This document shows positions 31,301 through 34,300 of a stretch of 64,000 nt of DNA, piece by piece (position 1 is the stretch's first letter; each line of letters starts with the position of its first letter). Below the pieces are notes generated by a model. That model made no database searches. It was not told where the DNA came from and saw only the letters and a program-made list of their open reading frames with translations. Source of the DNA: Podarcis erhardii (Eukaryota). Location: assembly GCA_964252035.1 (NCBI GenBank), contig OZ176217.1, one strand, 5' to 3'. A program made the translations under genes and the position numbers.

Positions 31301-34300
31301 AGGCTTTTAATATTAAATCTTACCTCTCTTAAGTGCGTTAATACCTTGCTTTTAAGATTATCACCTGTTGGGTTTTATGCATCTATTACACTGGGCAACA
31401 ATTTTTTACCTTTTGAATGTTGTCTAGATTTCTACAATTGATTTAGGGTATTTTTGCACTGCTGAATCAGGAAATGGCATCCGTTTCTCTCCATCAGGTC
31501 AGGTTTTTGTGCTATGTTGATTTGTTAAAAATCAGATCTTGTGACAAAATCGATTACATTTTTGTTGCATTATCAGCTGATTTTTGTCAACACATATCAT
31601 CCTAAATATGTTTTTAAGAGAGAAAATGTTTTTCCAACAACATATATTGATTACCTGATAGAAACATCGATTACTGTAAACTGAATGGTGGGCATTGATA
31701 AAGGTAAGTACACGTAAATTGCATGTTGCTTCACCATTTTTCAAACTTCAGGGCTTGAACTTCCGTTTCTTGGAACTCCTGGAATGCTCAGTGGCAGGGA
31801 GGTCTCTCTTCAGAGTCCAACAGTAGTCAGCCATCATGACTGCGTCCCAGCGACCCTGATACCTGGTCTCCATCTCTTTCATGTCCTGATGGAATCTCTC
31901 CCCCTGCTCGTCACTCCTTGAACCCAGGTTCTCAGTAAACCGGTCCATATGTGAAAATAGGTAGTGCATCTTGACGCTCATGTTGCAGCCCAGGTTTCTG
32001 AAAGCAGTCAGCATGTTGTTGACAGGTTCTGCATAGTTTCTGGCCTTATTGTTGCCAAGAAAGTTCTTCACTACCAGAACATATGCCTTCCACGCTTCCA
32101 GTTCCACTTCGTTCTTTGAGTTTCCGAACTCTGGATCTCTGATGAGCTGGCGGATCTGAGGACCGTCAAAGATGCCAGCTTTCAACTTCTCCATGGTCAA
32201 TCCTGGAAAAGCCTGGCACAAGTAAGTGAAGCAGTCACCATCCTTGTCCAGAGCCTTGGTGAACTGCTTGATTAAGCTGAGCTTGATGTGCAGCGGTGGG
32301 AAGAGTATTCTGTCTGTCCACCAGAGGGTCGTTGATGACGTTCCTTTCTTTGGAAGGCACCAATTCCTCCCGCACAGGCCCGTCCTTCTTCGTGTAATGC
32401 TGAGCACGGTCCCTACTATCCCACATGCACAGAAAACATGGGTACTTGGTGAAGCCAGACTGTTGTCCCAACAAAAAGTTCACCATCTTCAGGTCAACAC
32501 AAATAAACCACTTATGCTGATCATAACCAATTTTCTCCAGCACATACTTCACCACTTCATAGTTCTCCTTCAGTGTACTCAAGTGAGCCAGGGGTATAGA
32601 GGCAAACTGGTTGCCGTTGTGTAGCAGAACACATTTCAGTGATCGCTTGCTGCTGTCAATGAACAGTCTCCAATCTTTGGGTTCGTAGTGTGGCACTCCA
32701 AGCTTGAGCAGAAGCTGTGCAATATCTGCACAGTACACCAAGGCCTTCTCTTCCGAGAAAAAACGGAGGTACTCTTGATGCCTGTTGCGGAAGAAGCTGA
32801 TGTCAGAGAGGAGTCTTTTCCCCTTCAATCTGGATGCCAACAGTTCAGCAGAGTCCTTTGACAAGCTGAGGTCGTGAACTAGATCATTCAACTCCTTTTG
32901 GGAAAATGGATGTGGAGCATCATCTTCAAGAACAACTTCTTCTTCTTTATGTCCTTCAACACTGGAGGCATCTTCGTCACTAATATCAGGAAGTTCTCCG
33001 AAGATAGGCACTGGAATTTCATCACAATGAGCTACAGGACGACGTGCTGATTGAAGATCAGGATACTTGAGGCTGCTCCGGTTCTTTCTGTTGATCCCAG
33101 TCACATCAACAGCGCAGAAGTAGCAGTCAGTGACATGGTTTGTCGGCTCCCTCCAAACCATGGAAATTCCAAAGTTCAGACTCCTCTTGCCATTGGTCCA
33201 CCCACGTAGAGTCTCAGTGCATGCCTTGCACACCATGTGTGGCGCCCAAGCTTTATCCTGGTCACCAAGTTTAATACCAAAATAACTTTATGCTTTGCCG
33301 CACCAATTTATGGAAGATTTTGAGGTTTTATGACTTCAAACTGATCCCTTTTCGACATAATCACCCAGAACTATCGGACCTGAATACTTCTTGTCATTAA
33401 AATAATCATTTCCGATCAAAACAGTTATTCGACATGGCATTTTACCCCCACCAACTTCTTCTAAAATGCTCCACACAAGCGTACATGTGAACAAAAACAT
33501 AAAAAAACGACATGTGGCCATAGCTCAAAAACTTGACCTCATTGAGCAAAACCAATGTGATTTTTGGATTCAGCGCAATAGATTCATCCTAAATCAACTG
33601 AAAAAATGCAGACAACAAATTTGTTGTTGACCAGTGTTACATATTGCCTTCCTTGCAGTCCATAGGAAGGCCAGTATTATCATTGTTAGATAAAATAATT
33701 CCAGTCTCTTGCTTGCAGTTTCCTGAAATGCTTTTCGAGGAGGACACAGAACTGTGTGCTGACCTGTGTCTGCGCCTTCTCCGCCATTGCAGTAGCAAGG
33801 TGGGCATCATCCGCACCCATGCAAGCACCTCGCTCTACCTTCTCATGCGACAGAACTTCGAGATTGGAAACGTAAGTGCTCAATGGAGTAAGAAGGTGCT
33901 AGAGCTGTCTCTTCTGCTGCAAGGGTGCTTCCTGGGAGCAGGCCTGGGCCATCATCAGAGTCCAAGCAGTTGTTGTTGTTGTTTGAATTACTATTATTAT
34001 TATTTGTTTATTATTTATTATTATTTATACCCTGCCCATATGGCTGGGCGGCTTCCAACAAAGTATTAAAATACAGTGGTCTGTTAAACATTAAAACCTT
34101 CCCTAAACAGGGCTGCCTTCAGATGTCTTCTAAAAGTCTGGTAGTTGTTCTTCTCTTTGACATCTGGTAGGAGGGCAGTCCACAGGGCGGGTGCCACTAC
34201 CGAGAAGGCCCTCTGCCTGGATCCCTGTAGCTTCTCTTCTCGCAGGGAGGGAACCGCCAGAAGGCCCTCGGAGCTGGACCTCAGTGTCTGGGCTGAACAA

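What the first reader, a model, noticed from the sequence alone, without database searches (positions are those of the whole stretch)
31389..33636. Near-complete Chapaev3 transposon: candidate horizontal-transfer relic
Seen: 2248 bp with CACTG TIRs, TTA TSD and long imperfect subterminal inverted repeats. About 510 transposase codons retain the DDE candidates (LFIDSS, CVDLK, SDEQGE) and Cys/His zinc motifs. Only three lesions are visible: a missing N-terminus, a TAA at 33288-33290 and a frameshift near 32315. Known: Chapaev3 is a rare CMC-group lineage with a patchy distribution, reported as horizontally transferred among invertebrates and vertebrates including lizards. Inference: a relatively young invasion of this lineage, possibly an undescribed family. 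It ends 82 nt before the exon 35 acceptor.
Basis: partly seen in the sequence, partly recalled or inferred. Interest (0 to 1): 0.7.

Follow-up and report, generated by a model that had tools for sequence, protein, structure and literature searches.

The report
Recently invaded Chapaev3 transposon in wall lizard
This is a broken copy of a cut-and-paste jumping gene (Chapaev3 type) sitting in an intron of a wall lizard's DOCK6 gene, and near-identical, still intact versions occur in prawns and other water animals, so it almost certainly jumped between distant animal groups - a known habit of this transposon type, here in a host and lineage I did not find reported.

Summary
Window 31389-33636 is a 2248-bp element with CACTGG...CCAGTG ends, a TTA duplication on both sides, subterminal inverted repeats and about 514 transposase codons on the minus strand.

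It is a Chapaev3 (CMC) DNA transposon. It has a TWA duplication, CAC/GTG termini, an invariant D-D-E triad and the C(2)C, LH and H(4)H motifs. It is clearly homologous to the published Garfield_BM transposase.

The copy is dead. It belongs to a subfamily with a 278-280-bp deletion that removes the start codon and the first 40 codons. A Podarcis muralis copy at another locus shares that deletion. The window copy also has a private 2-bp frameshift and a private 9-bp in-frame deletion.

Horizontal transfer is strongly supported:
- Intact 2.5-kb elements in metagenome and Logan contigs are 95% identical in DNA.
- The transposase of the prawn Macrobrachium nipponense is 93-94% identical.
- RNA runs labelled invertebrate, fish and mollusc metagenome hold 96-97% identical contigs with their own flanks.
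- A worm-lizard homologue is only 53-62% identical.

Lizard copies differ by about 2-3.5%, far less than the 12-35% reported for Anolis Chapaev3 families. This is a new member of a known kind, of moderate interest.

The parts
31386..31388 (.). Target-site duplication TTA, left copy
   Evidence: The same TTA lies at 33637-33639. It fits the TWA consensus of Chapaev3 (PMC4079192, PMC3014272).
31389..33636 (-). Whole Chapaev3 element copy, 2248 bp; the transposase sense strand is the minus strand, antisense to DOCK6
   Evidence: It is 95.1% identical to the intact 2539-bp element L005:659-3197 and 96.5% identical to the Podarcis muralis copy L004:3601-5687.
31389..31401 (.). Terminal inverted repeat at the transposase 3' end (CACTGGGCAACAA on the + strand)
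33624..33636 (.). Terminal inverted repeat at the transposase 5' end (TTGTTGACCAGTG on the + strand)
   Evidence: There is one mismatch to the other arm.
31418..31516 (.). Subterminal inverted-repeat arms, left side (31418-31447 and 31461-31516)
   Evidence: (pairs I1 and I2, 77-83% complementary).
33519..33617 (.). Subterminal inverted-repeat arms, right side (33519-33574 and 33588-33617)
33286..33623 (-). 5' non-coding region kept from the full-length element. It contains the in-frame TAA at 33288-33290, which is not a coding lesion.
   Evidence: el_rc 1-353 aligns to L005:659-1010 at 93%, upstream of the ATG at L005:1167.
33285..33286 (-). Junction of the 278-280-bp internal deletion (156 nt of 5' UTR, the ATG and the first 40 codons, including the N-terminal CxxC). 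The Podarcis copy L004 shares it.
   Evidence: In run X1, 12 contigs continue past 33284 into the sequence that is deleted here (table 7).
32316..33285 (-). Transposase piece A, about residues 41-366 of the 556-aa protein. It holds the zinc-type Cys/His motifs, D1 (LFIDSS), D2 (CVDLK) and C(2)C (CFLC).
   Evidence: It is 92% identical to the intact proteins P0163 and P0168.
32800..32803 (-). Site of a private 9-bp (3-codon) in-frame deletion
   Evidence: (L004, L005 and L007 all keep the 9 nt), table 4.
32312..32316 (-). Site of a private 2-bp deletion that shifts the frame
   Evidence: (L004, L005 and L007 keep the 2 nt), table 4 (15 X1 contigs plus X15, X16 and X20 carry 2 extra letters).
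31748..32314 (-). Transposase piece B, residues about 369-556, with LH (PPLHIK), H(4)H (HYLFSH), the catalytic E region (SDEQGE) and the native stop at 31748-31750
   Evidence: It is 93-96% identical to P0163, P0168 and P0021.
31402..31747 (-). 3' non-coding region of the element
   Evidence: the DNA alignment to L005, L006 and even the TARA contigs runs through it.
33637..33639 (.). Target-site duplication TTA, right copy
33719..33871 (+). Host DOCK6 exon, 82 nt downstream of the element (context, not part of the element)
   Evidence: it matches DOCK6 chain 9vm2_A residues 1453-1503 at E 8.6e-25. AG at 33717-33718 and GT at 33872-33873.

Best explanation
The stretch is a dead, non-autonomous copy of a Chapaev3 (CMC superfamily) cut-and-paste DNA transposon.

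How the intact element works:
- It is about 2.54 kb and encodes a single 556-aa DDE transposase.
- Shown: the protein has N-terminal Cys/His zinc motifs, an RNase-H-like core (D254, D308, E504/E507) and a C(2)C...H(4)H zinc module.
- Shown: its predicted fold resembles Transib and RAG1.
- Inferred: it binds the CACTGG termini and subterminal repeats, excises the element and reinserts it at A-TWA-T sites, duplicating the TWA.

This copy:
- It landed at a TTA in a DOCK6 intron, antisense, 82 nt upstream of an exon.
- It descends from a derivative that had already lost the ATG and the first 40 codons through a 278-280-bp deletion. A copy at another Podarcis locus shares that deletion.
- Inferred: it was therefore moved in trans by transposase from full-length copies.
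- It then decayed neutrally, gaining a 2-bp frameshift, a 9-bp deletion and about 2% substitutions.

Origin of the family:
- It entered the wall-lizard lineage by horizontal transfer from, or from the same source as, aquatic invertebrates. Decapod crustaceans are the closest named hosts.
- Inferred: this was recent on an evolutionary scale, roughly 10-20 million years if the squamate neutral rate is near 1e-9 per site per year (my estimate, not measured).
- Donor, vector and direction are unknown.
For: Structure of the copy.

Chapaev3 features:
- TWA duplication and CAC...GTG termini (against PMC4079192 and PMC3014272).
- Relatives' flanks nearly all read A-TWA|...|TWA-T.
- Invariant D254, D308, E504/E507, C327/C330, L376-H377 and H485/H490 in a 46-sequence alignment.
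- The Garfield_BM transposase printed in the paper's Figure S1 aligns by eye at about 59% over the roughly 103-residue core, with the same three motifs.
- The model of the intact relative P0163 (pLDDT 82.5) matches HzTransib at E 2.6e-8 and the RAG1 core at about 1e-6.

Deletion subfamily.

High-copy family with many deletion derivatives in a lizard run: 4659 contigs laid, 1860 of them at 99% or more, with many internal joints.

Horizontal transfer:
- 2092 homologues; the best named ones are a prawn, shrimp, crab, leech, firefly and sea louse.
- Macrobrachium nipponense is 93-94% identical in protein.
- The intact elements L005 and L006 are 95% identical to the window in DNA and 97% identical to the consensus-like contig L007.
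- dS is 0.05 (L007-L005), 0.16 (L007-L009) and 0.40 (L005-TARA). dN/dS is 0.1-0.27 between lineages but 0.6-0.7 for the lizard copies.
- In the tree the window falls in a clade with SH-aLRT support of 100, together with the prawn and the metagenome elements. The squamate Rhineura sits in a distant clade.
- RNA runs labelled invertebrate, fish and mollusc metagenome hold contigs 96-97% like the window, confined to 31388-33637 and with their own flanks.
Against: - The organisms behind the closest DNA (L005, L006, L007-L016, X15, X16, X20) are unnamed or coded.
- Run labels such as 'fish metagenome' do not prove which organism carries the element. Carry-over of lizard nucleic acid into those libraries is not formally excluded, although their contigs include an intact N-terminal coding region and sites that differ from the lizard majority.
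- No orthologous empty site was examined, so the age rests on copy divergence and an assumed rate.
- L007, used as a consensus-like yardstick, comes from an unidentified run.
- The flank base next to one TSD copy is C/G rather than the expected T/A.
- The L004 flanks do not show a clean TWA next to the termini.
- No formal tree with Repbase Chapaev1, 2 and 3 references could be built.
Confidence: 0.88

Rival explanations
1. The element is an old, vertically inherited Chapaev3 family that has been in squamates since before they split from other animals. On this reading its similarity to invertebrate copies reflects strong conservation.
For: Chapaev3 elements do exist in other squamates: Anolis (PMC3014272) and Rhineura floridana P0117. 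Between lineages the transposase is under purifying selection, with dN/dS 0.1-0.27.
Against: - Non-coding ends and UTRs are also 93-95% identical to L005 and L006.
- dS to non-lizard-like lineages is only 0.05-0.16.
- A prawn protein is 93-94% identical, while the worm-lizard homologue is 53-62% identical.
- The tree is incongruent with host phylogeny.
- The lizard copies themselves evolve nearly neutrally and carry frame-breaking lesions.
Confidence: 0.02
2. The element is an assembly or contamination artefact: foreign DNA (for example from prey or a parasite) wrongly joined into the lizard assembly.
For: Near-identical sequences occur in many non-lizard-labelled samples.
Against: - The copy has a proper TTA duplication inside a DOCK6 intron.
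- A 691-nt contig of an independent run (X1) covers the left flank 31089-31388 with 2 differences and runs 29 nt into the element (table 8).
- A second copy with the same rare deletion lies at another locus in the Podarcis muralis assembly GCA_964188315.1.
- Thousands of variant contigs in X1 show a resident, diversified family.
Confidence: 0.02
3. The element belongs to a different superfamily, such as Transib, or to another CMC branch (CACTA/EnSpm, Mirage or Chapaev1/2), and only resembles Chapaev3.
For: The best structural matches are the Transib transposase and RAG1. An Atlas lead points to clusters carrying RAG1_RNase_H at a score of 0.82. No Pfam model hits it. No Repbase reference tree was built.
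Against: - Transib makes 5-bp duplications, by my own knowledge. Here the duplication is the 3-bp TWA that defines Chapaev3.
- The C(2)C, LH and H(4)H motifs match the published Chapaev3 description.
- Direct similarity to Garfield_BM is about 59% in the core, against 9-15% identity to Transib and RAG1 in the fold alignment.
- The termini resemble Merrow_PM and the Anolis Chapaev3 termini.
Confidence: 0.04
4. The sequence is a host-domesticated transposase gene or exonised sequence that serves DOCK6 or the lizard.
For: NCBI annotates a 282-aa fragment of another copy as a Podarcis muralis protein (P0015). The element lies 82 nt from a splice acceptor.
Against: - The ORF lacks a start, is frameshifted and evolves at dN/dS of about 0.6-0.7.
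- Both TIRs and the duplication are retained.
- The family is highly repeated, with many deletion derivatives.
- It lies antisense to DOCK6.

Expression in lizard RNA was not tested, because the single read-laying run went to other runs.
Confidence: 0.01

Closest known systems
Garfield (Chapaev3 family of silkworm, Rhodnius, monarch and Cotesia bracovirus; Zhang et al. 2014, PMC4079192)
   Same: - Element size is similar (2.29 kb against 2.54 kb for the intact relative).
- Both transposases are 556 aa.
- Both have a TWA duplication between A and T and the C(2)C, LH and H(4)H motifs.
- The catalytic core is about 59% identical by eye.
- Both are spread among distant hosts by horizontal transfer.
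   Different: - Overall identity is far below family level.
- The termini differ.
- Garfield was modelled with two exons (78 + 478 aa). The relatives here carry one uninterrupted ORF.
- The hosts here are decapods, other aquatic animals and a lacertid lizard.
- No copy was found in viral contigs.
Merrow (Chapaev3-1_PM; lampreys, teleosts, sturgeon, dragonfly; PMC4079192)
   Same: - The termini are similar: A-TTA-CACTGTGTAACAATTTT in Merrow_PM, against CACTGGTCAACAACAAATTT and CACTGGGCAACAATTTTTT here.
- Length is about 2.45 kb and the protein about 560 aa.
- The host range is aquatic and includes fish.
   Different: - The Merrow sequence itself was not available, so identity could not be measured.
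- The termini are not identical.
- Merrow was not reported in reptiles or crustaceans.
Anolis Chapaev3-1_AC, Chapaev3-2_AC and Conan/Chapaev3-3N_AC (Novick et al. 2010, PMC3014272; PMC4079192)
   Same: - All are squamate Chapaev3 elements with a TWA duplication.
- Their TIRs begin CACTG/CACTA...AACA.
- Non-autonomous derivatives outnumber autonomous copies.
- Conan was inferred to have transferred horizontally between tenrec and lizard.
   Different: - The Anolis families are 12-35% divergent and were called long extinct. The wall-lizard copies are about 2-3.5% divergent.
- The Anolis autonomous elements are shorter (1.8-1.9 kb, 485-561 aa).
- The only other squamate homologue I could compare (Rhineura) is 53-62% identical, which makes it a different family.
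Transib transposase and RAG1 core
   Same: - The predicted fold of the intact relative matches HzTransib (6pqx_A, E 2.6e-8) and RAG1 (E about 1e-6) over about 500 columns.
- Both have a DDE RNase-H core with a CxxC...Hx4H zinc module.
   Different: - Sequence identity is only 9-15%.
- Transib makes 5-bp duplications and has different termini (my own knowledge).
- This is a resemblance of mechanism, not membership.

Membership tests
Chapaev3 (CMC superfamily) | 3-bp target-site duplication of consensus TWA | tested here: met
   TTA lies at 31386-31388 and 33637-33639. The flanks of the related elements L005, L006, L009-L011 and L013 read TTA or TAA. The definition comes from PMC4079192 and PMC3014272.
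Chapaev3 (CMC superfamily) | Insertion between an A (5') and a T (3') flanking the TWA | tested here: inconclusive
   The window reads A-TTA|...|TTA-C on the + strand, so only one side fits. Relatives L005, L009, L010, L011 and L013 fit on both sides. One substitution since insertion would explain the window.
Chapaev3 (CMC superfamily) | Terminal inverted repeats with invariable 5'-CAC ... GTG-3' ends | tested here: met
   The ends are CACTGGGCAACAA and TTGTTGACCAGTG.
Chapaev3 (CMC superfamily) | DDE catalytic triad in the transposase | tested here: met
   D254, D308 and E504/E507 are invariant in 46 homologues. The window keeps them at LFIDSS, CVDLK and SDEQGE. The model has an RNase-H-type core that matches Transib and RAG1. 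Which of E504 and E507 is catalytic was not resolved.
Chapaev3 (CMC superfamily) | Conserved C(2)C, LH and H(4)H motifs between the second D and the E | tested here: met
   The window has CFLC (32427-32438), PPLHIK (32282-32299) and HYLFSH (31949-31966). C327/C330, L376-H377 and H485/H490 are invariant in A3. The same motifs are underlined in Garfield_BM.
Chapaev3 (CMC superfamily) | Sequence homology to a named Chapaev3 transposase | tested here: met
   I compared it by eye with the Garfield_BM protein printed in Figure S1 of PMC4079192. About 61 of 103 core residues are identical, from WRLFIDSS to PVRxEL. No tool alignment was run because the reference exists only as printed text.
Chapaev3 (CMC superfamily) | Phylogenetic placement with Chapaev3 rather than the Chapaev1/2, Mirage or CACTA references | not testable with these tools
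Merrow, Garfield or Conan (the three published horizontally transferred Chapaev3 families) | At least 80% nucleotide identity to the family consensus | not testable with these tools
Core protein identity to Garfield_BM of about 59% and the different termini argue that it is none of Garfield. Merrow and Conan remain untested.
Autonomous (self-mobilising) element | Complete uninterrupted transposase ORF with a start codon | tested here: not met
   A 278-280-bp deletion removes the ATG and 40 codons, and there is also a 2-bp frameshift and a 9-bp deletion. The intact ORF exists in the relatives L005 and L006.
Horizontally transferred transposon (the three usual criteria) | Similarity between distant hosts far above that of host genes | tested here: met
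   The Macrobrachium nipponense protein is 93-94% identical. DNA is 95-97% identical to intact elements in non-lizard-labelled samples, and dS is 0.05-0.16. Host dS was not computed. That it is saturated between reptiles and arthropods is taken from established knowledge.
Horizontally transferred transposon (the three usual criteria) | Phylogeny incongruent with the hosts, and a patchy distribution | tested here: met
   In the tree the wall lizard sits within a clade with SH-aLRT support of 100 that also holds the prawn and metagenome elements. Rhineura falls elsewhere, and leech, firefly and shrimp are interleaved. Only named database proteins were sampled, so patchiness across squamates was not surveyed.

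The most novel reading that the evidence does not exclude
This copy may be the fossil of an undescribed Chapaev3 lineage that is still alive. Intact 556-aa ORFs under purifying selection circulate at 95-99% DNA identity among decapod crustaceans and samples labelled fish, mollusc and invertebrate. On this reading the lineage crossed from aquatic animals into terrestrial wall lizards within roughly the last 10-20 million years and amplified there to a very large family. That would overturn the picture from Anolis that Chapaev is long extinct in lizards, and it would give a tractable aquatic-to-terrestrial transfer route, possibly through a shared parasite, to trace.
Probability: 0.45. Interest if true: 0.55.

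Novelty: new member of a known kind. Interest (0 to 1): 0.42.

Why it matters
Recurrent horizontal transfer of Chapaev3 transposons between invertebrates and vertebrates has been documented since 2014, so the phenomenon is not new.

What this case adds:
- A well-resolved example in a lacertid lizard.
- Intact donors or sister elements at 95-97% DNA identity, and a named crustacean relative.
- Evidence that most of the lizard amplification used deletion derivatives.
- An age far younger than the Chapaev families of Anolis.

It links aquatic arthropods, fish- and mollusc-labelled samples and a terrestrial reptile. That makes it a useful marker for asking which vector moves DNA transposons across that ecological boundary. 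The intact relatives are also natural candidates for studying CMC transposition, whose predicted fold resembles Transib and RAG1.

Tried and rejected
- Pfam gave nothing for either ORF piece or for the intact relative. Chapaev transposases seem to have no Pfam model.
- A profile search of solved structures by sequence gave nothing. Only the fold search was informative.
- I first suspected that the abrupt loss of similarity at 33285/33286 was an intron acceptor or foreign filler DNA. I rejected this once the intact element L005 showed the upstream 350 nt to be the normal 5' end, with a simple 278-280-bp deletion between.
- I tested whether the 5' part is an inverted copy of the 3' end. Only the outer 130-150 nt are similar.
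- There is no second copy or fragment of the element elsewhere in the window.
- A scan of viral contigs with the intact protein found no relative, so no viral vector was seen.
- Literature searches for this family in Podarcis, squamates or crustaceans found no report.
- The neighbouring ORF in L009 (Endonuclease_7 domain) did not identify the host organism.
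Full report
**1. Observation.**
On the + strand the element runs from 31389 to 33636 (2248 bp).
- It begins CACTGGGCAACAA and ends TTGTTGACCAGTG, a 13-nt terminal inverted repeat with one mismatch.
- TTA flanks it on both sides, at 31386-31388 and 33637-33639.
- Two further blocks of imperfect inverted repeat lie inside the ends: 31418-31447 with 33588-33617 (83%) and 31461-31516 with 33519-33574 (77%). A global alignment of the two ends shows that similarity fades 130-150 nt in.
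- The minus strand carries a long reading frame in two pieces: 33285 down to about 32316 (326 codons), and about 32314 down to a stop at 31748-31750 (188 codons).
- The element ends 82 nt before an AG at 33717-33718. The exon that follows (33719-33871) matches residues 1453-1503 of DOCK6 (PDB 9vm2_A, E 8.6e-25). I did not verify the exon number.
- No other copy or fragment lies in the window.

**2. What the protein is.**
Pfam has no model for it. A word search found 2092 homologues, typically 555-565 aa long.

Aligned with full-length relatives, the window copy covers residues about 41-556. In a 46-sequence alignment the invariant columns include:
- D254 (LFIDSS), D308 (CVDLK) and E504/E507 (SDEQGE);
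- C327/C330, L376-H377 and H485/H490.

The last three are the C(2)C, LH and H(4)H motifs that Zhang et al. 2014 (PMC4079192, after Yuan and Wessler 2011) give as diagnostic of Chapaev/CMC transposases. The same paper and Novick et al. 2010 (PMC3014272) define Chapaev3 by a TWA duplication, insertion between A and T, and CAC...GTG termini.

The window element meets all of these except one flanking base. The flanks of its relatives nearly all read A-TWA|CACTGG...CCAGTG|TWA-T.

The Garfield_BM transposase printed in that paper's Figure S1 aligns by eye with the window protein at about 59% identity over the roughly 103-residue core, with the motifs in register. The termini also resemble Merrow_PM and the Anolis Chapaev3 termini. 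I therefore accept Chapaev3. A formal tree with Repbase references could not be built.

**3. How it works.**
An AlphaFold model of the intact relative P0163 (mean pLDDT 82.5) matches the HzTransib transposase (6pqx_A, E 2.6e-8, TM 0.44-0.50) and the RAG1 core (E about 1e-6) over about 500 columns.

Shown:
- a DDE RNase-H-type transposase with a CxxC...Hx4H zinc module and N-terminal Cys/His motifs;
- termini, subterminal repeats and a TWA duplication.

Inferred:
- cut-and-paste transposition by binding the termini and subterminal repeats, excision (probably through hairpin chemistry, as in Transib and RAG) and integration at A-TWA-T.

**4. State of this copy.**
The contigs L005 (an ENA metagenome assembly) and L006 (a Logan contig) each carry an intact 556-aa ORF. 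The element is a complete 2539 bp in L005; L006 holds 2504 bp of it, running to the contig end. Compared with them:
- The window copy has one 278-280-bp deletion at 33285/33286. It removed 156 nt of 5' UTR, the ATG and the first 40 codons, including the conserved N-terminal CxxC.
- It has a 9-bp in-frame deletion near 32800-32803.
- It has a 2-bp deletion near 32312-32316 that shifts the frame.
It is not a nonsense mutation.

The large deletion is shared by a copy at a different locus in Podarcis muralis (L004, assembly GCA_964188315.1). The two small deletions are private to the window.

So the copy descends from an already defective derivative that still transposed, presumably with transposase supplied in trans. 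In the lizard-type run X1, 12 contigs continue past 33284 into the sequence deleted here. Copies with the full 5' region therefore exist too. Dozens of other internal-deletion joints were also seen.

**5. Abundance and age in lizards.**
- Run X1 gave 4659 contigs on the element: 1860 at 99% or more, 1962 at 95-99%, 788 at 90-95% and 49 below 90%.
- One 691-nt contig covers the left flank with 2 differences and runs 29 nt into the element. That is just short of the tool's 31-nt rule for bridging.
- Summed depth inside the element is hundreds to thousands of times that of the flank. The tool warns that this is not a copy number.
- Window and L004 are 96.5% identical. Each is 98.1-98.4% identical to L007, a consensus-like Logan contig of unknown organism.
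- dN/dS of the lizard copies against L007 is 0.6-0.7, close to neutral.
- The Anolis Chapaev3 families are 12-35% divergent and were called extinct. This family is much younger.
- With a neutral rate near 1e-9 per site per year (my assumption), about 2% per copy means roughly 10-20 million years.

**6. Horizontal transfer.**
Named relatives:

| Host | Identity |
|---|---|
| Macrobrachium nipponense (prawn) | 93-94% protein identity to L005 and L007 |
| Chionoecetes opilio (crab) | 90-92% over 148 aa |
| Penaeus vannamei (shrimp) | 73-79% |
| Helobdella robusta (leech) | 70-76% |
| Pyrocoelia (firefly) | 70-83% |
| Caligus (sea louse) | 67-70% |
| Rhineura floridana (the other squamate) | 53-62% |

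DNA and selection:
- L005 and L006 are 95.1-95.2% identical to the window and 97% identical to L007, across coding and non-coding parts.
- A second intact lineage (L009-L016, one protein on 20 contigs from several studies) is 93-95% identical.
- TARA marine contigs are 81-84% identical.
- dS is 0.05, 0.16 and 0.40 for these three comparisons, with dN/dS of 0.1-0.27 between lineages. This is the pattern of a transposase kept functional while moving among hosts.

Tree: a maximum-likelihood tree places the window in a clade with SH-aLRT support of 100, together with the prawn and the metagenome elements. Rhineura falls in a distant clade.

Sequencing runs: RNA runs labelled invertebrate metagenome, fish metagenome (four runs, three studies) and mollusc metagenome hold 10-20% of the stretch's 31-mers.
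- When laid, their contigs lie only within 31388-33637 and have their own flanks.
- They are about 96-97% like the window.
- In the invertebrate-labelled run, one contig continues past 33285 into the canonical N-terminal coding sequence.
- The mollusc-labelled run shows 841 contigs of widely varying likeness, with differences rich in C>T and G>A.

Limits: the organisms behind the closest DNA are unnamed or coded, no empty orthologous site was examined, and direction and vector are unknown. No relative was found in viral contigs.

**7. Comparison with what is known, and verdict.**
Recurrent horizontal transfer of Chapaev3 families (Merrow, Garfield, Conan) among insects, a bracovirus, lampreys, fishes, tenrec and Anolis is published (PMC4079192). 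This element works the same way and passes the membership tests for Chapaev3.

It differs from Garfield at family level. It differs from the Anolis families in age, and probably in family too, since the only other squamate homologue compared was Rhineura. Its relation to Merrow and Conan could not be measured.

I found no report of it in the held literature, but I could not consult Repbase or Dfam. I rate it a new member of a known kind. It is solid and tidy and of moderate interest, mainly as a young aquatic-to-terrestrial transfer case with intact relatives in hand.

The N run at 30590-30749 was left untouched.

Noticed in passing
P0163 (encoded at L005:1167-2837), model m0e9354de7a78: The predicted fold of the intact Chapaev3 transposase matches the HzTransib transposase (6pqx_A, E 2.6e-8) and the RAG1 core (E about 1e-6) over about 500 columns. 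The CMC motifs C(2)C and H(4)H look like the RAG1/Transib zinc site. An Atlas lead (score 0.82) also points to clusters carrying RAG1_RNase_H.
   Followed up: partly
window 31374-33653, run X20 (labelled mollusc metagenome): 841 contigs of very mixed likeness lie on the element (349 of them under 90%). The differences are dominated by C>T (125 places) and G>A (103 places). This suggests an old, diversified family there with methylation-type or editing-type decay.
   Followed up: no
L009:3212-5404: Next to a related intact element lies a 731-aa ORF, cut by the contig end, with a recombination endonuclease VII domain (E 2.4e-6). It is probably another mobile element and did not reveal the host organism.
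   Followed up: partly
L011:1-242: Beside the main related element there are reversed partial copies of its 5' end (L005 element positions 1-108 and 439-545). This looks like a nested or rearranged insertion.
   Followed up: no
L004:3588-3605 and 5683-5699: The Podarcis muralis copy does not show a clean TWA directly next to its termini: the flanks read ...gtaaa| and |attatc. An extra A on each side or flank mutation may explain this.
   Followed up: no
window 30590-30749: A run of 160 N lies about 640 nt left of the element. I left it as it is.
   Followed up: no
P0001 (ENA sample ERZ21867824, 164-kb contig): A complete 557-aa ORF of the same clade, 84-88% identical, shares the lizard-type '[13 protein letters not shown]' variant.
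   Followed up: partly
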